From Takakia lepidozioides (lineage: Eukaryota > Plantae > Bryophyta): a DNA stretch of 64,000 nt. A program made the translations under genes and the position numbers. Shown here in pieces: positions 13,191-27,034 of this stretch. Position 1 is the stretch's first letter, and each line of letters opens with the position of its first letter. Under the pieces are notes generated by a model that saw only the letters and a program-made list of their open reading frames with translations, ran no database searches and was not told the origin of the DNA. The stretch covers positions 52,638,001 through 52,702,000 of the forward strand of contig CM060734.1 in assembly GCA_030704615.1 (NCBI GenBank), given 5' to 3'.

Positions 13191-16100
13191 TTAAATGAGC
13201 ACCCGGTTGCAGATGTGAATCTGAACCCTCGGAGTTCTTTCTTTCGGAAATGCCAGGCACGACAGATGCTTCCCCTGCTGGGAAGTGGCCACCCCTCCAT
13301 TTCTCAAACTGTCTGAACCTTGGCCCTTGTTTGACAAATGACAGGGACGTAAATGGGACGCACTGCTGACCGGCAGATTAAGCTTTGTAAGTATTGCTTG
13401 CTCTTGTTGTGTATCTGCGATTGTGGTGAAGGGAAACTTTTCATTTCAGTGTAATTACTGCAGAAGGACCACCAAGTATGGAATATCAGATATTGTTCAA
13501 AAACAATCATTTGGTTTGGATACATTCCTCGTCTGGGTTCTCCGCAAAGCTGGAATGAAGGGCGTTGCCCATCCCATCTAGAATAGCTGATGTTGTCATG
13601 GAGGATTCCATGCAGAGAACTGCCGCAATAGCATCGGCCTGTCTCACTTCCCTTTGGAACATGAGCCTTGCATGTGCTGAACCCAAAACATGCCCACATG
13701 CCCGCAGAGATTGGGTGCTGGATGAAGAGGGTATACTTGAGCAGCACATAACAGTTTACAGATCTATACGACAAGCACAAGGAATGGAAATGAGTTTCTT
13801 TACAGAAACAGTCACATAAAATCCTGGTTAAACACAAGCATGTCTGGCAGTGTTGGAAGACTCAAGGGTCACTTTACTAGAGAAAGGGAGGGACACTTTT
13901 AAAATCAAGATATCACTTGTACCTTGTGCAAGCCTGATCAAACTTTCAAGCATACGTATTGTGGTCCTAGCTGCAGTCATTTAGCAGAAGACCCACATCA
14001 GTTCCTAAGTTTAGTGTCTGACTATGAAGAAGCACCTGGTGTATGTGACCACTCATGCAGGGAAGGTGAAAAATACTTTGATCCGTACTTAGCATGTCCA
14101 CTGAACAGACTAAAAGAAACAAGGAAACTTACAACTTCCACATGAAACTCACAGAGCTTGGGGGCCTATCAAAATACTAGACAACCAAACAGGCCTAAAA
14201 GAATGCTCAATGCTAAGAATTTCGGGAGACAGTCATGAGAGCTAGCTGACAAGCTCACTCAACAACAACATTGGCTGCAAGGACACAGATTTAGCAGATG
14301 AACACTTGCATCTGCTGGCTTTCAATGAGGATTTACAAATAAGGATACAGGGTATACAAACCCTGAATCCATTGAATCAGTTCCAAATGACCTTGCACTG
14401 AGGCAGAAGGGATGTGGAAGGAGATCAGGTACCAGCATTAAGGGAAGGTGATCGCCTCTGCAACTGGTAGTAGCTACTGAGTACTTTCTCAGCCTCACTC
14501 GTCAGAACTGGTTTGAACTCCTGGCGCACATATCGGATATAACTGCCAGTCACAGCAAACCAAAATGCTGGTTTGGTTATAGACAGCTGGTTGAAAGAAT
14601 GGCCATGATCTTCCACTGATTTTCAAATTTCAAATAATCTCTTCACCTGCTCGCACGGCCTGGAAAAGTAATTTTGAACCAAGAAGATTTGCTTCTAACA
14701 CGGCTAGCAAATTAGTGCCGATCACAAGAAAGGAACCCACACACAGACCTGGCCATGACAAATGTTACCTCTGCAGCATTGCCATAGTCCATATCCCAGT
14801 CAAGTCACCACCTCCACCTGAACTCTGCGGCTTTTTCTCCTGCAGGCAACCTCATCCATTACAAAGCAAATGAGTCTTACTGATGCACTCCAACTGCCAT
14901 TTCTCTCACCCAACCTCACCATTTCCTCCCAGGTATTCCCCTCCCGGGAGGACATGCTGCCAGGAATTGGTTAGCGTATATGTCCCTAAGGAGTTTCAGA
15001 TCTAGTAGACTTTCAGACTTTTTGCACATGCATGATTATCTATAAGAGGTAAGGAGTAGGATGATGAACTACGAAGCAGTCTGCAGGTAGAAACTGAAAC
15101 CCAGTATCAGGATGGCTAGAAGAAAGAACTTGCCTCTGACAAGATGTGTGATGAGACAATATCGTCCCACTCAGGATTTTTTGTGTCCAAAAGGACCAGG
15201 ACAATGTCGAACCGGCTCAACAGTGGTCCCGACAACGTTGTGTTCATGGTCAGAGCTGTTATATTGTGTTAAGGGGACAAAAATTATTCCCTGGGTGCAA
15301 TTTGTTGTAACATCATTGCACCCAGTTCGACCTGGAAAGATACTGATGAAATATCAAGATAAAATTTACATACTAACAACCACAGAGAGACTGCTGTATT
15401 AAAACCCTCCACTGTACTTTGGGCCTTTCGATGCCAGTACATAACAAAGCTCATACTATCTGACTTGGCGACTGCTTGGATACGTTGAGCAGGGTTATAA
15501 TGCCCCTTAGGATTGGTGACTCCAAACACAGTTGTCCTCGTGTTGAGTGTCATCAGTAGGCCAGCCTGCAATACATCACAACAGTAAAAAATATTTAGTG
15601 TCACAACTGGAGCAGTTCACCAAGGTATCCCTTCAATGACCATGCTATCCTATCTAGTCATTCAATGACTCTGGACACATCTGCCTGTGTCACTCCCCTG
15701 CACTTCTCCCCCTTTTCCCCATTCTTTAATATACACTCGTCTGACAAGCTCTTTGGGCTTCCTCTGGAGGTTATTATCTCTTCCTTTCTTAGTCCCTCTC
15801 ATGTGCCAAAGCAAGAGCGACATAGCAGATTTAAAGTACCTTTGCAACACTGATGCTTTGTTGTTCCATAGCTTCATGTATTGTAGTTCAGTCTGACTCC
15901 CGAATGCTACATAGAGATGTCTGTGTTAGTCTCCAGTTGGTCACTTACAACACAACCAGTGACCTCACGACATAGTTTGACAGACCAAGAGATGGGGGAA
16001 GCAACCTTCTCTCCACTGCAGCCACTTACTACACATAATTACAAATTACAAGTGGCAACCACAGAATTGACCAATGAAGTTACAGCACAAAACTCTCGCA

Positions 16101-17720
16101 AATGCTCTAAAATAAATCCAAACTGAGTAAACTTCTTATTGTGTCACTGTATTTACAGTCAACTTCTTAGTCCGAGGAAGAGCCCAGAACCTCATATCTC
16201 TACAGAATGTAGGATGTGACTATATATTCTCTGTGGAAGATACCGATTGGAGGATACTGGATCAAACACAAACGTAGTAAACAACTGCATGCCAGACTCA
16301 AAGTTGTAGTTCCTAGTATCATATAAAGTGGGTCCATGAGGAACTTTCGTAGCTTGAATGGTTATAGGTCTTATGTACTACCTGTCAAACTCATCAATGC
16401 AGCAGAGGCCGCCATCTGCCAACACCAGTGCCCCAGCTTCCAGCATCCACTCTCCCGATTTCAAATTACCACATACAGATAACCTCAGCAACAACTCAAG
16501 CGCTCTGTAATACGTGGACCATTACCACTACAATGAGGTGGTATTTGAAGTGACTTGTTACCTCCATCCTTGACAGCAGTAAGTGTGAGGCCGGCACTGG
16601 TGCTGCCAAGGCCTGTAGTCATTACCGATCGATGACTCAGCTTTGCCGCATACTTAAGAAACCGTGACTTGCCCGTTCCTGTCATAAACCAAAAGTTGCA
16701 ATCAACAGATGCTTAACAACTTAACAGGGGAACATCTATGAATACATGCATGACTCATCCACTTACCATGGTGGCATGCATCAGCATGTGCCTACCAATT
16801 TCATTTTCAACAAAGAATATTGCTTGTAGGTTGTTTATCAAATCTTGCTATGGTTTCTGTGGACGTTATTGATCTTCCAAAATTATACAGTGCATTAATT
16901 GTAGTGGTTTATGTTATACTGCAACTTACCCACATCAATTTTTATAACAGTTCTACAAGGGTGCCATTTTAGCACGAGTGGCAAAGTAGTATACATTCGG
17001 AACCCCAACAAGAGCTATACTGATGAAAACCTTTTAGTGGGATATAACTTGGACAGACAAAAACCAATCACTGACCTGGGTCACCAATGAGAAGGAGATG
17101 GGATTCACCGCGAACCCTTGTGCCCGATGCATCCACATGTTGAACTCCCCCGATCAATGTGAGTGCAACTGTGAAGTCCAATGGAAGGATTTTAGGCACA
17201 ATTACAAGCAATCAGGCAAAACCCAACCCAACACATAAGAAATGCTTCAAACTATGCTTGCAGTTTAGTATTATACAGATGGCATAGGGAAAACACAACA
17301 TTCTAACCAATTAATTCTCCTGCTTTCCTCCCGCACAAACCTGCCTGTGAAGAATCTTACAGATTTCATTCCCAAGCCCTAGTTCACATCTTCACTCATG
17401 GTTAGTCATCTACAAGGAGGTCGAAGTCTGTCTCGGGCTTTAACTTTACCTTTCTTTCTTGGCAGCTTACGTGCACGAGGCCTTGACCCTTAGGCAATCC
17501 CTTAAGCAGTAGTTGCTTTTGGGCTGCTTTTTGGCTCTGGTTTTCTCCTCTCTCTTGTTTTTTCCATTTTGTCCCGTAAGCTCTTTGAGCTTTCCGTGGA
17601 CGTTATTTCATTTCATTTCATTTCTTGTTACACAGCACATGGGCTATGTGAGACCTGCAAGCTTCACCATAAATAAGCCATACACCTGGGGACAGATGTT
17701 TTGCAAGATAGTGTTGCGAC
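13191..17720 (-). pseudogene. MCM9: MCM9 helicase, 3' half (exons 9-20, AAA+ domain), disrupted
   Basis: Exons 17720-17655 (RNTILQNICPQVYGLF), 17168-17076, 16678-16562 (Walker A GDPGTGKS across the junction), 16454-16382 (Walker B CIDEFD; acceptor is GG), 15906-15840 (in-frame TGA at 15890-15888), 15565-15484, 15255-15134 (LLSRFD; GC donor), 14839-14769, 14542-14433, 13970-13923 (RTTIRMLESLIRLAQ), 13676-13524, 13414-13191. Confidence 0.93.
17458..17624 (+). mobile_element. LINE 3' end with (TTTCA)n tail in an MCM9 intron
   Basis: Aligns with 9768-9820, 48570-48680 and, inverted, 21505-21601; ends in ATTTC repeats. Confidence 0.65.
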
Positions 17721-17988
17721 CTGGGCACAAACAAACAAGGAAAGTTTTGAAGAACTGTATCTAAATGCTTGAAAGGTCGGAATGAATTCCTTGAGGATGT
17801 TTATGGTCTGCACAATAGTTTCAAGTGGGAAATTCTTATAGCTTCTGACCATGTGCCTCACTACATAGGCTTTGGTTTGATCATGAGTGATATAGGATAC
17901 ATGATAAGAAAGAGTCTCGCAAATGGAGCACAAACAATTACAAACTTCAGATAAACAAAAGAATCTTCCAGGGAAATAAGGAACTAAC

Positions 17989-18097
17989 AGCCGATGGAGG
18001 TGCGCCGGCCATGAAACCGAAGCGCCAACAGAAACTCGGAGATATGAAAGACGACCAGCGCACCCAACATCCACCATAGTTGCTTGATCGGACTCAT
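17989..18097 (-). pseudogene. ICMT: Isoprenylcysteine carboxyl methyltransferase exon 1, detached from the rest of the gene
   Basis: MSPIKQLWWMLGALVVFHISEFLLALRFHGRRTSIG resembles the plant STE14/ICMT N-terminus (RQLxQM..FFHISEY.LA..HG); followed by a GTTAGT donor, phase 1. Confidence 0.82.
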
Positions 18098-18885
18098 CCC
18101 CGTTTCTGATCCCCAAGCTTCGATTTTAGAGTGTACATCCATTGTAACGTGCAGTGCTGTTACATGTGCTGCTTCTATCAGCGAATTCCGAGTCTTCTGA
18201 AACAGGGCATCAATTTCGTTCTTCACCTTCACAAACAAATTTGTTATTCTTGCAGACATGACATGAAATACCCATCTACAGCTTGCGATCAGACAGGGAC
18301 TGTGAGAGATATCGATCTGAAAGTCAACGATGATGATCCATGGTGGACAAGCGGATGGGTGGACGATGAACGAAAAGTGGTTTTCGTCGTAGCGCATACT
18401 GTAGGGTTCTTGCTGTTTTCCCGCCTAATTCCTCAAAACCGCAACGTGGCATTTGGCCCAACCCCTGGAAGGCCGAGTGATTTATTAGAGAGATCACTGA
18501 TCTCCGCCGAAACCACGTTGGATTCATCGGATATGTTCACTGGATGATGCAAATCTGTGGGCGATTTTCCCAGTCAAAATTGTCCATAGCACTCATTTCG
18601 TGACTTACAGCATGTCTGAACAGAAATGGGCGGCGAATTGAACTTGAAGATATGTGGGTGCTCATGTGAGAAGATGCTACATAGTCACTTTGCCTGGGTG
18701 GAAATTTGGCGCCTAGATTGATGAAGAGGTCCGTGTCAGGTGTTTGTGTATGCGAGAAACCAGGAGAGAAGCAGAAGAAAGAGGAGAAGGAGAAGATCGG
18801 GAGCTAGAGCTACAGAGACTTTATGTGTTGAGGGAGTGCAATCTATGAGTTTGAAACGAAAGTGCTGCGAAGAATACAGGGGGCC
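18098..18885. promoter_or_regulatory. Bidirectional ICMT/MCM9 promoter region with E2F sites
   Basis: About 790 bp between divergent starts; TTTCCCGCC at 18417-18425 and TTTGGCGC at 18705-18712, typical of MCM gene promoters. Confidence 0.65.
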
Positions 18886-21800
18886 ATGTGAGTCAAGCGG
18901 CAGAGGCGGGGGCAGTGCTTGATACAGAGTATGTTGGAGTATTCCAGCAGTTTTTAGAGCACCACCATGCTGAAGCTCTTGAATCGCTTCTTCTTGCAGA
19001 CGACGACTCACGGCATTACCCTCTCATTGTTCAGTAAGTCCTCATTTTGGAAGAGAAAACATCAAAATTGTGCATTGGGTTGGAGGGTAGAAATGGTTGT
19101 ATGATTGTGTCAAGCCAACTTGGCAGAGGGGGAGGGAGAGAGGATAGAGTGAGGGAGGCAGGTCGTAAGGGGGGGTCGAGGGAGACAGTCTGAATTGTCT
19201 GAATTGTGCTTTTCTTGGGCATGTGCAAATTCTTCTGTTTGTGTTTGCGAAAATCCGAGAAGAAGTCTGAGGAAGAATCGATAAGTGCTGGAAAGGTGGA
19301 GGGCTCAATGATGGATGCAATTCAAATTCAGGTTATGCTGTGCAGGTATTCTGAATTTTTGGATGCCAGCCCAGCTATCGCCAACCTTGTGTACTTCTAT
19401 CCTGCCAAACTCCTTTCACTGTTCGATGTTGCAGCACGGGAGGCCCAGGTAACTTGATTACTTAAATTACTGCTTCATGTGAATAGCTTTGGGGACCCTT
19501 AATAAGGAGGGGCTCTGCTCTTTGGATTTGCAGGCTGTGGTTTTATATTCTCATAAGCAGCCCAAAAGTATGTCCGTGAAAGATAATGTGCATGTTCAAC
19601 TAAGTGTGCATGGCTCAGCTATGGAATGCCCTGGTATGTGCTATTTACTACTTGGCTTCTTCTTTCATGTTGTGATGTGTCAGAGTAGACTGTACTAAAG
19701 GAATTGTAGCTATACTCCGACGCACATGTCTCTGAGCAGGGTTCTCAGTATGTGATGCATAGACTGAACCTCTTTAGTTGTGGGTTGCCTTTCTAAGGAA
19801 ACAGTATCTTAGGTGTATGTAAAACCAGATGGAGATTAGAATTTTCTAAAGTGGAAAAATGGCCACCCTGGCCATAATGGTACATTATGCACATAGCTGT
19901 CAGGTTCTTACGAAAAGGCAGAAAGCTAGTAAGAGAAGCCAGTTAAAGAGTCTAATGGAGTAACTCCTACATCCTTAAAGAAAGCACCCAAGTGTCTAAG
20001 CATAGCTATCAGAAATCCTGCTGGCTACAACCTCAAAGCCTTATCTGTAGTTGCAACTTCCTTGTCAGAAACGCGTCCCAACATTGGACACATCCGGTGG
20101 GAGCATGTTGGTGAGCTACTAACACTCAAAGGGACTGTCATTCGGTCGGGTGGGATCAAAATACTTGAGGGGGAACGTGAATATGAATGCACTAAGTGCA
20201 AGCACAGGTGCGAGTTTCCCCAACTTGCCCCTTTGATTGGATATCTCCAGCAGTCATCTGTGGAAGTCTTATTCCTATTAGGTCTTTAATGGACACCGAA
20301 AAGCATCCCATCTGTACCCGGAGTTAGGGTCTATATCCCTTTTATGCTCACCCACTTATCTCCTGGAAAATCTGCAACAAATGTTGGGAAGAGAAGTCAA
20401 AAGATAACCTGTTTGTGAGGTAGGTATCCTAGAAAATATGCCATGCATGATTCAAGTGAAGTGGAGACACAACGAAAGGGATGTCACAGACAGATTGGCG
20501 TTGGCCCAAATTTCTGGCAAATCACCACGTGGCCTCTATCTCCTTCGACAGGGTGTGTCTGAAATGGATTTGTGCTGTTTCAGCTCTTATAGAGATGAGT
20601 GGGCATGTCCAGATTCAAGGTTGAACCAGAGTTGGAGATGGGTAATTCCCTTCAGCTACCAGCAATCTGCCCCTCTCAGGTTTGGAAAATTTCAGTGTGT
20701 GTCACCGGGGTACACCTCCTGTGTCCACCACATCAGCAGATTTATGTATTGTGTTTTCCTAGAGACAAATATATATGGATACATGCACAGATGAATTGAC
20801 TGACTACTGGACACCTGCATTGTCACACATAGATAAAAAGTTGATGAGTCTGCCAGAAAGATGGACCAGACAGCCATACAAAACTTGACAAGTATACTGT
20901 TATGTGTTACAACATGTGCAAGGGTGCATTGAGCTAGGAAGGTGTGGAATTAGTTCCAATTTCATCTGCTAAAATGCCAATCGGAGGATTTCTACCATGG
21001 GTTTCTTCTGCCTTCTGTTGGAAATATATCTTTGTCTGCGCCTGCACACTTGAAGAGAGGCAAGAGTTCGTAACGTCAGAATGTCCACAGGAATCCTTCA
21101 GTGTTATGGAACAAGAGTTGTAACAAATAAGGAAACAATTTAGAGGTAGTGAGAGACTGGAAGGAAGAAGAAATGAAACTTTGTAATGTCTGCAGAAAGC
21201 TCGAAGAGCTTCTGGGACAAGAAAAGAAAGAAACAAGAAAGACATAGTGCCCTCCACAAGCAGCCCAAAGGCTCAAGGGATTGTCCAACAGTCATCACCT
21301 CATGTAGATAAGCTGCCAAGCTTTTCTGGTCCTCCTATGGAAGACATAGATTGGGTATCACGGAATAGACAGTTGAAAGAAAGACATCTCTGCTTGCCAT
21401 AGCTTCAGGTCACCATCCTCAAGAGTGAGAAGAAAGTTTAGTATGTCCACCAGAAGAGGTCCCAAACATGAGAGGTAGGAAGAAAGGAAATGAGATGGTG
21501 CTTTATAACGTCCGCGGAAAGCTCATAGACCTTATGGGACAAAATGGAAGAGAACATGAGAGAGGGGAAACAAACCAGAGCCAAAAATAAAAACTATTGC
21601 TAGAGAAAGGGAGAATGGAGGAAATTTTGTGACATCTAATGGCGGTCACAAGGGCCATGGGAGAGAAAAGAAAAAGAAGGAAGAAAAAGGAGTGAAATGA
21701 AATGAAATGGTGCTTTACAACGAAAGGAGAAAGGAGAGGAAGAGGCATTGGCGCAGTGGGTGGGGTCCCCAACCATTCAGATCTGATGGTAGCATTTCCT

Positions 21801-22595
21801 TCTACCCCATGCTACTAACTTGAGTTTGGCTTCAAACTTGCAGCGAACAAAACCATGCACCGGTGGAAACTTTAGGTGTGTGGAAGAGACCACAGTCTGC
21901 CATGACTATCAGGAAATCAAAATCCAAGAGAGTATGCAGACGCTAGGAGTGGGCTGCGTGCCGCGATCAATTACTGTTGTCATTGAGAATGATCTGGTGG
22001 ATGTTGTCAAGGCAGGCGGTAAGTTTGAAATGGAAAACCTAGGGATGCTACTCATTATGTCAGCTTAGATGTTCCCAAGTCTATCGCCTCTTGAATTTGT
22101 GTTTCTCTGGTGTGAAGATGAGGTTGCTGTGACTGGGGTGCTATATGCCAAGTGGCAACCACATGTGAAAGACGTGCGCTGTGATCTAGAGCTTATGTTC
22201 CTTGCCAACTACATCAGGCAAATCTTTACTTGTCTCTGTGTTTTATGCTTTCTAGTGGAATGGACAATTGAAACCTTACTCACCTTTTTTTATCCTTTTT
22301 AATGGTTAGACAATTTCTCACCATATGTGGCTGCTAGTTCCTTATGTCTCGGTCATGAAATCAATCTTGGACTATGGTAATTTGTGTATTTAGAGGGATA
22401 GACTGGTCCAGACTACTGCTTTAAATGAAAGAGTGATATGCATAGGAAAAGTGAGATTAACAGATGCAATGTCATATGTGAGTCTTGGCTGTGACAGGAA
22501 AGCAAATGAACTGAAGGCATCTATTGATGTATCTGAGCCAGTGGTGCAGCAGTTTGAGCAGTTTTGGTGCTCCTTCTGTGATAACCCCTTAAAAG
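18886..22595 (+). pseudogene. MCM9: MCM9 helicase, 5' half (exons 1-8), on the opposite strand to its 3' half
   Basis: Exons about 18886-19033 (FLEHHHAEALESLLLADDDSRHYPLIVQ), 19346-19448, 19534-19633, 20069-20207 (LKGTVIRSG..YECTKCKH), 20613-20679, 21844-22018 (HDYQEIKIQE..PRSI..DLVDVVKAG), 22118-22217 (GC donor), 22498-22595 (FW..DNPLK, phase 1). The ATG at 18886 is out of frame with exon 1 by one base. Confidence 0.92.
21505..21601 (-). mobile_element. LINE 3'-UTR fragment in MCM9 intron 5
   Basis: Reverse complement aligns with 17528-17606 and 48616-48670. Confidence 0.6.
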
Positions 22596-24234
22596 GTTTG
22601 TGTTCAACCAGCTGGCTGTCTTCTTCGGGTATCTTTTCCTTTCAGAAGTTGAGATGCAGGTATTTGACACACGCAAGAGTGAGATCGAAGGGTTTGTGTG
22701 TCTCTACAACAGAGGGATGTACTCATTAGACTTTGCTTCTTGTAGCCTGGCGGCAATAGAGCCTGTGCCTGGAACAGTAAGGGGAAGTGGATGGGGGCCC
22801 ACTAGTGGATGAGCCTTTCCTAATGGTGGTGTCAACATGATTAGCTCTATATACTTTTGGAAGGAAGCTTTTGTATAGCATCAGTTGAGTTTTTTCTCAC
22901 CCTGTATCAGAAACAATGCAACCCACACCTTTCAACATTGGCTCTAGCGTTAAATGTTGCCAAAAAGAGGTGGAGTGACTCTTGTTTGGAAGAATACCCA
23001 TTATTGTCTATCATTTAGCTGGGTAAATGTACCATTCAAAGGTAGGCAAACTACTCATCGTTTGACCTTAGTGTAGGCCTAAGCATGAGAAGTTCCTTTG
23101 GTAGCCCATGAGCCCCACTTGTTCGTCACAGGTTGTGAGGGCTTCAGTCTATTCAACGGAGATCTCTAGGGACTTCAAAAACTCATGTCCTCTCTTCTAC
23201 CATCTTGGCTTGTTTCACAGGTCAGTGTTGTTTCTAAGGGGTACAGTGAGCAATCTTTTGGTATCTTTTCTTGTCCTTCTGAGCCAACTGGAGCCCCTAC
23301 CTCCTGTTACGATCTCGAATCTGCAGGAGACACATACTGTGGCTAGTCGAAGGACGTTCAGCAGCATCATCTCTTCAATATCGACTCTCCCTCTGAGCAG
23401 GAAAAGTGGAATTTTGTAGATCTGCCATTTGGACAAGCCATTAAGTTCAATTGTCCTTCAAGCCTTTTTCTCTCTCAGAAACAGAATTTGTACGCTGTCC
23501 ATCGTTCTCCAACAGACATAGTCGGCCTCTCTGTCTCCCTCTCTCTCAACTATGAACATAGCTGCTTCTTCCGAAGAACCTTCCTTCCATGCTTTGATAG
23601 ATGTGTTAAGGGTGTGTTACTCAAGTAATTTGCACATAAATATACCCCTGGTTAAGGGAAGATAGTGTGTACACTCTGCATAGGGGAGGTCTGGGACCAT
23701 TTGCTTCTTTGTTGAAATAAATTTCTCCATAATCAAAGAAATGTGAATGTGGACTAAGCAAGACTCGAGGGTCGAGAATGGAATTGCCACTATAGACTGT
23801 AAGATTTGTTATTTCTATTTATGGTCTTTCTCTTAGCTCTTTTACTTTAGTGATGAAAGTGGAAAGGCTACTATAGACTGTAAGCTTTGTTATGCCTAAG
23901 TAGGGTGTGTCTCTTAGCCCTTTTAGCAATAGAGCTCACAAATTGCTGGATCATCTTGTCCCCCATGTTTGCAATATGAAATTGAAACTTTTGAAGAATG
24001 AGACCTTCTCTCGGGTCTGTGTGTTAGCTGTGAGCCCCAACATTTGCTACAGGAAACTGAATGTTTGAAGCTCAAGACCTTTTCTTTGGAACATAAGTGC
24101 TATTAGCCTTATCCTGACCCGGGACCAACGTTGTTCATGGGACTGAGCATATGTGGTCGTCAAGTTGTAAAACTTGGCAGAACTATAGGGTGTTGGGTGT
24201 GGAAAGGCCGTCCAAACATACACCAATACATAGA

Positions 24235-25085
24235 GACTTCTTTGACATAGACCACGGTGTAGCTCAAGGATGTACCCTCTCCCCTCTGCTCTCCAATGTT
24301 TTCATCAATCAATTACGCAAGGTTGTGGAAAGTGAGGGACTGGGTTATGGGTGGGTGGTGCTACCATACCAGCCCTTATGTTTGCGGATGACTCCGCAGG
24401 CGTAGGGGAGACTCCATCCAATCTTCAGCAGTTGATTGATTGCGCAAAGAGATACTTTGACCTTTGGGGGCTAGAGGCTAACGTCAGTGAATGCGCAGTG
24501 GTGGGCATTCGACAACCGGGGGGAGGGAGGAGGCAACCTCAAGTGGCAGTGGAGAAGCCAAGAGATTCCTGTCCTCCCTTCCTACACATACCTTGGTATT
24601 GACTTTCCTCCAACTGTAATTTGGAAGCACGTATACAAAAAGTTGTTCAATCTGGGAAGTGCAAAGCGTTGGGTCTCACTAAATTTTTCCACTGCAGAGG
24701 GATCAACTGTGAAGTAAAAAAAACCATGCTTTGCCGCGTTATCAACCCTACCTTGGAGTACGCATCTGCAGTGTGGGTTGATAACTCCAACCAGGCTAAG
24801 TCCCTAGAGTCTATTCAAGTTGGGGTTCTCAAGGAGTGCCAGCATACTCCAAAACAGCTAATGTGGCTGTTTGAGGTGCGGCATTCCTCCCTTAAGCTCC
24901 CGACGAGATGAATTCAATTTTAGATGGTGGGGTCAGCTGCAGCGTATCAGTAATATCAGATATCCTAAAGTTAATCGACTCTATATCTTGGAAGCAGGAT
25001 CGCCCTGTCAAACAGGCTAAGTCCTGGCGGAAGAGGGTGGAAGAGATTTTCAAGGATCTGAATCTAATTCCGCAAGTCTTCTTCC
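24235..25085 (+). mobile_element. Non-LTR retrotransposon (LINE) reverse transcriptase fragment
   Basis: GVAQGCTLSPLLSNVFI..ALMFADD..LQQLIDC..YTYLGIDF..PTLEYASAVW, spread across frameshifted ORFs. Confidence 0.88.
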
Positions 25086-26041
25086 CTGACTTTCCAGTCT
25101 GTGACATGGTACTCATTCTCTCCCTCTCAAAATTGGGTGTTTCTCAATGGCCAGAATTCTACAGCAAGCAAAGTACTCTTTTGTCCTTGTTTTCCTGATT
25201 TCCGTTCTCAGGTGCACAGAAAGGTCAACAAGTACACTTAGCAGTAACTTGGAGGAACTAATGCTCAACTCTAATTTACACCATACTACTTGTGAGCCTC
25301 CAGGTCAACAAGTGGTACTCCAGGAGTATCCCAAGGGACCTTTAGCAAAGTCGAAAGTGCAACTAAGCCATAGGTACTTTCAAACAAGAAAGTAGCAAAT
25401 GGAACAACATAGTAAATGATCCATGAGGCGAGGTGACCATTTTCCAATTGCGATCCAGTCAGTGTCGTAAGCATCCTTGCGTAGGAGGGATGCCCTTGTC
25501 GCAAGTCTCAAATAAAGTGTTACCACACTTTTCTCCTTGCTAGTATCATTATGAGTATTAACGGTTAACCCTCCTTGGTCCAAAATTTGGGGTGAGTTCT
25601 TGTATCCATTATAACTTTAGGCAAAAGTTGGTTTAAAGGCAATCTGGGTTCTTCTGTTTGTATATATCTTAAGTGGCAGCAAAGGGTTCATAGAAGGAAT
25701 ATTTGAAGGCCCAAAACTGTTTTCAGGGGTGCTTGGCTTTCGCGCTCTCTTGTCCTCCCTACTAATGTGGGTGGATGGTCTATATGCTAAGGACTTGATT
25801 CAATAGCCCTAAGAATAAAAATGAGGAAGTAAGTCTATTATTCTAGATGAGCAAGTCTCTTCACGGATTGCATACATAGTCTTAAGCAAGGCGGGGCTGT
25901 AGAATTGCATAGCTCATCTAGAACTTTAGACATAGTCTTAGCTATAGAAGGGTACTCAAATAGATTCACTTGTATTAGTAGGACATTCAACCTTACTTGC
26001 ATGGAAGCTTACCTCTTAATAGCAAGAATTTGTTGTTACAG

Positions 26042-27034
26042 GTTTGTACGTCACCCTGGCTACTTGGGTTTTTTCATCTGGTCAGTGGGTACTCAGGTGT
26101 TGCTTTGCAATCCAGTTTGCACAGTTGGCTATGTTGTTGTCACATGGCGATTTTTCAACGACCGCATCCCATATCCTTTCCAACTTCCCTTACCAGAATG
26201 TTTGTCACTTGGTCATGAGGCATTCACGATTTACTATTGGTCTAAACTGCTTTTTCGGGAGGCTCTGATGTCTTTAAACTAGAGTCGTTTTTCTTATTTA
26301 GAACTGGTTTTGTCTCCAGAAACAAGAAAAATCACGAGGGTATAGAACCTTAGAAATAGGAGGCCCTTGTGTCTTTAACGTGGAGTCTTGTTTTCTTCAG
26401 TTCTACCATTTTTCTCCATAGAAAGACAAACAGTGGAATTTAAACCCATCTTGTTGTTACCATAGCCACTTACCAGAGGTTGTACAAACGTTTGGTCATA
26501 CGAAGTCATTCTTGCCTGCTATGTCCCTCGACTCCCTAAGTGGTTCATTCATTGATTCGATCTTGTGGCAGAGATGGAGGTTCACCATTGTGGAAGTCAC
26601 CATCAGTTGAGGAACTATTTTTGAGTTCTTATGTATAGAGTAATGTTTCCGTTTGAGAGCCCCAGAGCGAGGGCGGAGCCCAAGGTCTGGGTTGCAAAAA
26701 CCTTGTCTGGGCTCCTGTCAGCTTCTGACATGCAGACATAATCCATATCAGCGGGTGACCTTACACTTGTAAGGTTACCTTATGGGCATAAGGTGGCCCT
26801 CTGAAGCACACATATTGGATTCTGCCAGGGGACTGTCCCTACAAAAGGAAGGCAATTTTCTGGCAGATCTTTATGTATACGCGAGTGGTTGGTCTCTGAA
26901 GTCTTCATTTTCCAGATTGGGTACCTTAACATTTACGATTCAGATATGAGGAATATTTTCTACAACAATTTTTTGGGGAACACTACGAGGAATATGCACA
27001 AAAAGTGCCATCAGGCCTCCCCCTAATAAAGTGA
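26042..27034 (+). pseudogene. ICMT: ICMT last two exons (catalytic C-terminus); middle exon(s) not found
   Basis: 26042-26170 FVRHPGYLGFFIWSVGTQVLLCNP..WRFFNDRIP and 26944-27034 YEEYFLQQFFGEHYEEYAQKVPSGLPLIK*. Confidence 0.9.
26171..26943 (+). other. U12-type (minor spliceosome) intron with AT-AG termini
   Basis: 5' site ATATCCTTT; branch site CCTTAAC at 26924-26930, 13 nt before the 3' end; splicing restores RIP-YEE. Confidence 0.8.

What the first reader, a model, noticed from the sequence alone, without database searches (positions are those of the whole stretch)
13191..27034. Inversion of a bidirectional promoter swaps the 5' ends of MCM9 and ICMT
Seen: MCM9 exons 1-8 are on + (18886-22595) and exons 9-20 on - (17720-13191). 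No exon is duplicated or missing, and the phases match (..PLK G | GT CGC = GRN). ICMT is split the opposite way: exon 1 on - (18097-17989), last exons on + (26042-27034). Inference: one inversion of the shared promoter plus 5' exons, with breakpoints in 17721-17988 and 22596-26041, made two reciprocal chimeric loci. Alternatives are a polymorphic or invertible switch, trans-splicing, or mis-assembly.
Basis: partly seen in the sequence, partly recalled or inferred. Interest (0 to 1): 0.88.

Follow-up and report, generated by a model that had tools for sequence, protein, structure and literature searches.

The report
Inverted, decaying MCM9–ICMT locus in moss
In this moss-type genome assembly a 5.5-kb block holding the shared promoter, the first eight MCM9 exons and ICMT exon 1 lies inverted, but both genes are already dead here, and other accessions appear to keep the normal order, so this is most likely an ordinary lineage-specific gene-breaking inversion.

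Summary
The layout is real in the assembly. MCM9 residues about 17-317 are on + (18867-22595) and residues about 318-650 on - (17720 down). Each exon occurs once and there are no N runs. ICMT exon 1 is on - (18097-17989) and its last two exons on + (26042-27034).

In the moss Ceratodon, MCM9 (-) and ICMT (+) are colinear divergent neighbours.

- The MCM9 start codon is deleted (the ATG at 18886 reads ATG TGA); three other studies' runs carry an in-frame ATG there.
- Exon 13 has AGA>TGA (15890-15888).
- The exon 12 acceptor is AG>GG.
- Six of seven coding differences from another accession are non-synonymous, mostly derived in the window.
- ICMT exon 2 is absent from all 64 kb.

RNA contigs of another accession fit a normally spliced exon 7-8-9-10-11 mRNA to the base. 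They break from the window at 17889.

Best reading (0.6): a real inversion private to the assembled lineage, in an already or newly dead locus. Main rival (0.22): mis-orientation in the assembly. Functional chimeras, a switch or trans-splicing are unlikely.

The scan also noted MCM9 fragments elsewhere in this genome.

The parts
13191..17720 (-). MCM9 3' half (exons 9 to last; AAA+ core and C-terminus). Exon 9 is 17720-17655, exon 10 is 17168-17076, exon 11 is 16678-16562.
   Evidence: tblastn. Exact boundaries. Best solved-structure match is human MCM9 residues 469-507.
15888..15890 (-). Premature stop TGA in MCM9 exon 13, at a codon that is AGA (Arg) in two other mosses.
   Evidence: (alignment A1).
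16455..16456 (-). Lost acceptor of MCM9 exon 12. It reads GG where Ceratodon and L001 have AG. The next AG, 3 nt downstream, would delete one Gly.
   Evidence: model.
17721..17988 (.). Junction A (hybrid 268-nt interval). Contigs of other accessions break at 17889/17890.
   Evidence: the X4 contig ends at 17889. X5 has depth 0 at 17794, 17827 and 17852 but about 50 at 17889-17999. One X5 contig runs on from 17889 into 134 unlike letters. There is no splice site at 17889.
17989..18097 (-). ICMT exon 1 (ATG at 18097, donor T|GTTAGT, phase 1).
18098..18866 (.). Shared divergent promoter and 5' UTR region. RNA contigs reach 18370 on the ICMT side and 18724 on the MCM9 side.
   Evidence: table 8.
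18866..18867 (+). Site of the missing MCM9 start codon. X4, X5 and X6 have ATG inserted here, in frame.
   Evidence: table 4.
18867..22595 (+). MCM9 5' half, 8 exons: 18867-19033, 19346-19448, 19534-19633, 20069-20207, 20613-20679, 21844-22018, 22118-22217 (GC donor), 22498-22595.
   Evidence: MCM_OB domain. Best solved-structure match is human MCM9 residues 175-239.
22596..26041 (.). Junction B interval. The reads hint at a breakpoint near 23400-23486 (inferred). It holds a degenerate LINE-type reverse-transcriptase fragment at about 24118-25000 (+) and no ICMT exon 2.
26042..26170 (+). ICMT exon 3 (PF04140 core).
26944..27034 (+). ICMT exon 4 with stop codon. It is preceded by a U12-type intron.

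Best explanation
The assembled accession carries a real, lineage-specific inversion of about 5.5 kb, from 17890 to roughly 23400-23490. The block holds the divergent promoter, ICMT exon 1 and MCM9 exons 1-8. The breaks lie in MCM9 intron 8 and in the intron after ICMT exon 1. No repeats flank them, which fits end-joining repair (inferred).

The locus is not a working pair of chimeras. In this lineage MCM9 is a pseudogene: its start codon is deleted, it has a nonsense codon, an acceptor is lost and constraint is relaxed. The ICMT copy lacks exon 2. Which lesion came first is unknown.

Other accessions of the same species label keep the start codon. They make a normally spliced MCM9 mRNA and appear to have the standard order.
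For: Shown:
- Layout and exact exon phases.
- No N runs.
- No direct or inverted repeats shared by the two junction intervals.
- Ceratodon (two accessions) has colinear MCM9 (-) next to ICMT (+).
- A second bryophyte-like relative, L001 (a metagenome contig; 71-88% exon DNA identity to the window), has colinear MCM9 with a 190-nt intron 8.
- Independent lesions in the window: ATG missing while X4, X5 and X6 (three studies) have it; AGA>TGA in exon 13; acceptor AG>GG.
- Six non-synonymous versus one synonymous difference from X4/X5 in the 5' half. The window is the derived state at L67I, L71V, R112Q and R264Q.
- ICMT exon 2 absent.

Inferred: - The X5 contig of 475 nt equals 1 + 100 (exon 7) + 98 (exon 8) + 276 nt. 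Exons 9+10+11 are 66+93+117 = 276.
- Its match runs two letters (GT) past exon 8 and stops at the third. This fits exon 9, which starts GTC.
- X5 coverage stops abruptly at 17889.
- A contig of the same depth (13.1) lies at 23487.
Against: - No reads of the assembled individual were available. All runs that hold the stretch differ from it by about 1.3%. The two junctions are therefore not confirmed by independent data.
- The X4 DNA contigs are only 270-600 nt. The output did not list any contig across 17889.
The joint and loose-end tables were truncated.
- An X4 contig bridges 23395 as in the window, so the exact position of the second breakpoint is uncertain.
Confidence: 0.6

Rival explanations
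1. Assembly mis-orientation. The block of about 5.5 kb was placed backwards by the assembler, and the real genome of the assembled plant is colinear like Ceratodon. The point lesions may still be real.
For: - Every other sample that could be laid looks standard or uninformative.
- Contig breaks at 17889 in two runs coincide with a predicted junction.
- All exons and their splice phases fit perfectly once the block is flipped.
Against: - There are no gaps.
- There are no repeats at either junction that could confuse an assembler.
- The gene carries three other lesions and relaxed constraint. A broken gene is therefore not implausible here.
- Real small inversions between accessions 1.3% apart are expected to be commoner than repeat-free inversion errors (my estimate).
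Confidence: 0.22
2. The inverted order is shared by the species. A full-length MCM9 mRNA is made by trans-splicing of two divergent transcripts, as in Drosophila mod(mdg4).
For: - X5 RNA fits an exon 8-9-10-11 mRNA.
- An X4 DNA contig is continuous across 23395 as in the window (table 4).
- The exon 8 donor and exon 9 acceptor are intact.
Against: - X5 coverage drops from about 50 to 0 exactly at 17889. One contig leaves the window's sequence there. Standard order explains this and the inverted order does not.
- 23395 need not be the breakpoint.
- The window's own copy cannot yield a working protein (no ATG, TGA in exon 13).
Confidence: 0.05
3. The other accessions are inverted too, and their normal MCM9 mRNA comes from a second, intact MCM9 copy elsewhere in the genome.
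For: Earlier notes of this scan list other MCM9 fragments on other pieces of this genome.
Against: - At every variant site X4 shows one allele only, at single-copy depth of about 80-140 (table 3). There is no sign of two near-identical loci.
- The noted copies are fragments described as broken.
Confidence: 0.06
4. A functional invertible promoter switch, or a maintained polymorphism, that yields useful ICMT-MCM9 and MCM9-ICMT chimeric proteins.
Against: - There are no inverted repeats or recombinase sites at the junctions.
- The in-frame chimera would stop at the TGA in exon 13.
- The reciprocal joint is out of frame.
- RNA gives no support for either chimera.
Confidence: 0.02

Closest known systems
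MCM9-ICMT neighbourhood of Ceratodon purpureus (loci L005, L006)
   Same: The same two genes lie in divergent orientation. The exon structures match: ICMT has 4 exons and MCM9 intron 8 falls at the same codon phase.
   Different: - Ceratodon is colinear and intact (MCM9 803 aa, ICMT 243 aa).
- Ceratodon has an extra 189-aa gene between the two.
- The window has the 5' block inverted, ICMT exon 2 missing and MCM9 disabled.
Gene-splitting intronic inversions such as the human F8 intron-22 inversion (established knowledge)
   Same: An inversion with one break in an intron separates the promoter and 5' exons from the 3' exons and leaves every exon intact.
   Different: The F8 inversion arises by recombination between inverted repeats. 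Here no repeats lie at the junctions, and a second gene is cut by the other break.
Lineage-specific loss of MCM9 (not identified in Drosophila, PMC3536722; MCM8 and MCM9 as homologous-recombination repair factors, PMC10291252)
   Same: A dispensable repair helicase has been lost in one lineage.
   Different: Here the loss is caught early, within one species label. All exons are still recognisable and another accession still expresses the gene.
mod(mdg4) trans-splicing in Drosophila (established knowledge)
   Same: Exons of one mRNA are encoded on opposite strands.
   Different: There is no evidence here that the joined mRNA and the inverted DNA occur in the same individual. The window's copy is not translatable.

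Membership tests
MCM9 (MCM family helicase) | N-terminal OB-fold domain closest to MCM9 | tested here: met
   PF17207 E 6e-13. The best solved chains are human MCM9, E 2e-12, against 5e-8 or worse for other MCMs.
MCM9 (MCM family helicase) | AAA+ core with Walker A and B, closest to MCM9 rather than MCM8 | tested here: met
   GDPGTGKS and CCIDEFD are present. Human MCM9 scores E 1.4e-10 against MCM8 at 1e-4.
MCM9 (MCM family helicase) | Orthologous position | tested here: met
   It lies next to ICMT, as in Ceratodon.
MCM9 (MCM family helicase) | Intact, translatable, colinear gene | tested here: not met
   No in-frame ATG. TGA in exon 13. Acceptor AG>GG. The two halves are on opposite strands. 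It is a pseudogene of MCM9, not a working member.
ICMT (PF04140) | C-terminal catalytic core | tested here: met
   PF04140 E 4e-16. Tribolium ICMT residues 201-248, E 4e-13.
ICMT (PF04140) | Complete coding exons (4 in mosses) | tested here: not met
   Exon 2 (profile positions 38-119) is absent from all six frames of the 64 kb. It is present in Ceratodon and in L004.
Gene-disrupting inversion (structural variant) | Outgroups show the colinear order | tested here: met
   Ceratodon, two accessions, and the metagenome relative L001.
Gene-disrupting inversion (structural variant) | Junction-spanning reads from the individual that carries it | not testable with these tools
   No run matched the assembled individual; the share of words was at most 0.72.
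Gene-disrupting inversion (structural variant) | Standard arrangement in other accessions | tested here: inconclusive
   It is inferred from X5 contig length arithmetic and the depth breaks at 17889. The joint itself was not listed in the truncated tables.
Nuclear trans-splicing of divergent halves | Joined mRNA and inverted DNA in the same individual | not testable with these tools
   The RNA (X5) and DNA (X4) runs are from different samples, and the contigs are too short.

The most novel reading that the evidence does not exclude
The inverted order is the normal state in this species, and full-length MCM9 mRNA is produced by trans-splicing between two divergently transcribed half-genes. This would be a plant nuclear counterpart of Drosophila mod(mdg4).
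Probability: 0.04. Interest if true: 0.85.

Novelty: new member of a known kind. Interest (0 to 1): 0.3.

Why it matters
If real, this is a clean, datable example of how a repair-helicase gene dies. Within one species label, one lineage keeps an expressed MCM9. Another shows a start-codon deletion, a nonsense codon, a lost splice site and an inversion that also cuts the neighbouring gene.

It is also a warning for annotation. Gene callers may output two chimeric or half-length proteins here that do not exist. It does not reveal a new mechanism.

Tried and rejected
- Repeats at the junctions that could drive recombination or confuse an assembler: none found. The only inverted repeats are two intronic copies of a very abundant SINE-like element (17458-17606 and 21271-21549). 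They do not sit at the breakpoints.
- ICMT exon 2: searched by profile in all six frames at E up to 200, and by relaxed tblastn. Nothing found.
- Catching same-species transcripts in the protein collections: the exon 8 piece gave no hit. The best hit of the OB exon among 1.8 billion representatives was 73% identical, so this organism is not in those collections.
- Two metagenome scans, one for the window-form junction A and one for the spliced exon 8-exon 9 joint: no match. These are uninformative.
- Pfam on ten ORFs of the 22.6-25.5 kb interval: nothing beyond the weak reverse-transcriptase hit.
- A splice explanation for the break at 17889: rejected, because neither strand has a GT/AG or AT/AC site there.
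- A breakpoint at 23395: rejected, because an X4 contig crosses it with only an extra T (table 4).
- Counting window-private changes at invariant sites of the 3' half: suggestive, but contaminated by exon-edge alignment artefacts. I use only R427* and T438S from it.
Exons were searched one by one by reference. Exons were concatenated only inside local scripts, to check frame and length.
Full report
**What is in the window**

The 64-kb window has no N runs. Earlier notes place PPR-DYW genes at its far end, and a follow-up note on the same genome calls it a moss-type plant genome. The closest ICMT proteins are from mosses, in a cluster that includes Ceratodon purpureus.

I mapped two named MCM9 proteins, P0018 from Gossypium and P0025 from Cryptomeria, with tblastn.
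- Residues about 17-317 lie on the + strand between 18915 and 22597.
- Residues about 318-650 lie on the - strand between 17778 and 13489.
- Every part occurs once in the window.

Splice-aware refinement and direct reading give eight + exons: 18867-19033, 19346-19448, 19534-19633, 20069-20207, 20613-20679, 21844-22018, 22118-22217 and 22498-22595. The first - exons are 17720-17655, 17168-17076 and 16678-16562. Exon 8 ends ...AAAAG|GT and exon 9 begins cccAG|GTCGC.

Both halves match human MCM9 best among solved structures, ahead of MCM8 and MCM2-7.

The ICMT parts are as follows.
- Exon 1 (ATG 18097 to 17989, donor T|GTTAGT) is on the - strand.
- The catalytic-core exon (26042-26170) is on the + strand.
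- The last exon (26944-27034) is also on the + strand.

The observation therefore holds at the stated coordinates.

**What the ancestral state was**

In both sequenced Ceratodon accessions, MCM9 (803 aa, - strand, colinear) lies 3.8 kb upstream of ICMT (243 aa, + strand, four exons). A small gene sits between them. A second relative, on a 163-kb metagenome contig, also has a colinear MCM9, with a 190-nt intron between exons 8 and 9. The window thus differs from the moss ground plan by one inversion of the block that holds ICMT exon 1, the promoter region and MCM9 exons 1-8.

1. The ATG at 18886 reads ATG TGA. The MCM9 frame has an upstream stop at 18852 and no in-frame ATG in exon 1. Contigs from three other studies (X4, X5, X6) all carry an extra ATG after 18866. 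It falls exactly between two codons of the MCM9 frame and aligns with Met1 of the Cryptomeria protein. The assembled sequence has therefore lost precisely the start codon.
2. Exon 13 has TGA at 15890-15888. Ceratodon and the metagenome moss have AGA (Arg) there.
3. The acceptor of exon 12 reads GG where both relatives have AG. The next AG would delete one residue.
4. Seven coding differences between the window and X4/X5 were listed for the 5' half. Six are non-synonymous. Polarised with other mosses and seed plants, the window is the derived state at L67I, L71V, R112Q and R264Q. X4 is derived at one site.
5. ICMT exon 2, about 82 codons, is a single exon in Ceratodon and in the Logan relative L004. 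It is missing from all six frames of the 64 kb.

The interval between MCM9 exon 8 and ICMT exon 3 instead holds unique sequence and a degenerate LINE-type reverse-transcriptase fragment.

Hence neither 'chimeric locus' can make a useful protein.
- The ICMT exon 1 to MCM9 exon 9 joint is in frame, but the product would end at the exon 13 stop.
- MCM9 exon 8 joined to the ICMT exon at 26042 would be out of frame, because exon 8 ends in phase 1 and that exon needs phase 2.

**What public reads say**

I laid one stretch of 6,000 letters, 17600-23599. No run is the assembled individual: the best holders (X1-X4) have 0.72 of the words and differ by about 1.3%. All records are Logan contigs.

X4 (DNA) covers every bin at single-copy depth, but in pieces of only 270-600 nt.

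X5 behaves as spliced RNA.
- One contig joins exon 1 to exon 2.
- Another carries exons 2-3-4.
- A 475-nt contig (record 15) carries exon 8. By the tool's own coordinates it consists of 1 nt of exon 6, exon 7 (100 nt, joined through the GC-AG intron), exon 8 (98 nt) and 276 further letters.
- Its match to the window runs two letters (GT) beyond exon 8 and fails at the third letter. Exon 9 starts GTC. The ICMT exon at 26042 starts GTTTGT, and the match would then have run on further.
- Exons 9, 10 and 11 are 66 + 93 + 117 = 276 nt.
- Both contig ends therefore fall on exon borders. I take this as strong indirect evidence that X5 makes the normal exon 7-8-9-10-11 mRNA.
- X5 has no depth at 22600-23199.

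The second set of clues is at the junctions.
- X5 has no depth at 17794, 17827, 17840 and 17852, but about 50 at 17889-17999.
- An X5 contig (depth 13.1) matches 17889-17999 and then runs on for 134 letters unlike the window.
- Neither strand has a splice site at 17889.
- An X4 contig also ends exactly at 17889.
- A single X5 contig with the same depth figure, 13.1, lies at 23487, where it shares a 10-nt insertion with X4.
- Depth arithmetic puts the start of that expressed block near 23435-23445.

Together these suggest that in X5, 17889 is adjacent to about 23.44 kb in the opposite orientation. That is the standard, non-inverted order, with MCM9 intron 8 about 1 kb long.

This is inference. 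The joint and loose-end tables were truncated, and I had only one call. An X4 contig crosses 23395 with only an added T, so 23395 itself is not a breakpoint.

**Weighing the explanations**

The standard order in other accessions leaves two main options for the window: a real inversion private to the assembled lineage, or an assembly mis-orientation.

For a real inversion:
- There are no gaps.
- Both junctions are unique sequence without shared repeats.
- The gene shows three further independent lesions and relaxed constraint. Breaking it would cost nothing, or the break itself started the decay.

For an artefact:
- The junctions have no independent confirmation.
- The exons fit perfectly once the block is flipped.

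I put the real inversion at 0.6 and the artefact at 0.22. Small shares go to three other readings: a second intact copy elsewhere, trans-splicing, and a functional switch. The window's own copy cannot be functional under any of these.

**Comparison with what is known**

Inversions that cut a gene within an intron and leave all exons intact are well known; the human F8 inversion is an example (established knowledge). The difference here is that there are no flanking repeats and that the second break cuts the neighbouring, divergently transcribed gene. MCM9 is a repair helicase that works with MCM8, and it has not been identified in Drosophila (PMC3536722, PMC10291252). This is a new member of a known kind. 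It is useful as a caught-in-the-act gene loss and as an annotation warning, not as a new mechanism.

Exons were searched one by one by reference. Exons were concatenated only in local scripts, to check frame and length.

Noticed in passing
window 17400-17626 (-) and 21130-21780 (+): These are copies of a SINE-like element of very high copy number. X4 depth reaches about 4e5 against about 130 for single-copy DNA, so there are thousands of copies. The element is also abundant in the RNA run X5. The two intronic copies are in inverted orientation in the window (arms 17562-17606 and 21505-21549, 91% complementary).
   Followed up: partly
window 22218-22497: MCM9 intron 7 is a GC-AG intron (AG|GCAAAT ... 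gacAG|G). Its use is borne out by the X5 RNA contig that joins exon 7 to exon 8.
   Followed up: yes
window 26171-26943; L004 1356: The last ICMT intron looks like a U12-type intron. Its 5' site is ATATCCTTT and a CCTTAAC branch site lies 13 nt before the 3' AG. The relative L004 has GTATCCTTT. The window therefore has A at +1 with an AG 3' end, an unusual AT-AG pair that may be one more lesion.
   Followed up: partly
window 24118-25000 (+): This is a degenerate, frameshifted non-LTR reverse-transcriptase fragment (weak RVT_1 hit, FADD motif). It lies in the interval where ICMT exon 2 would be expected.
   Followed up: partly
window 23763-23924: Two tandem copies of an 81-nt unit, 77% alike.
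   Followed up: no
window about 23400-23599 and beyond: This block has high RNA depth in X5 (about 42-54). That is higher than the MCM9 exons and ICMT exon 1. It has no recognisable ORF or Pfam domain and may be part of a long unspliced transcript of the ICMT relic.
   Followed up: partly
window 18845-18922 (+): An upstream ORF of 25 codons sits in the MCM9 5' leader, out of frame with MCM9.
   Followed up: no
L005 7434-8812 (Ceratodon): A 189-aa gene without Pfam domains lies between MCM9 and ICMT in Ceratodon. It has no counterpart in the window. The Ceratodon genes downstream of ICMT (C2-domain, PLD) also have no match in the window.
   Followed up: partly
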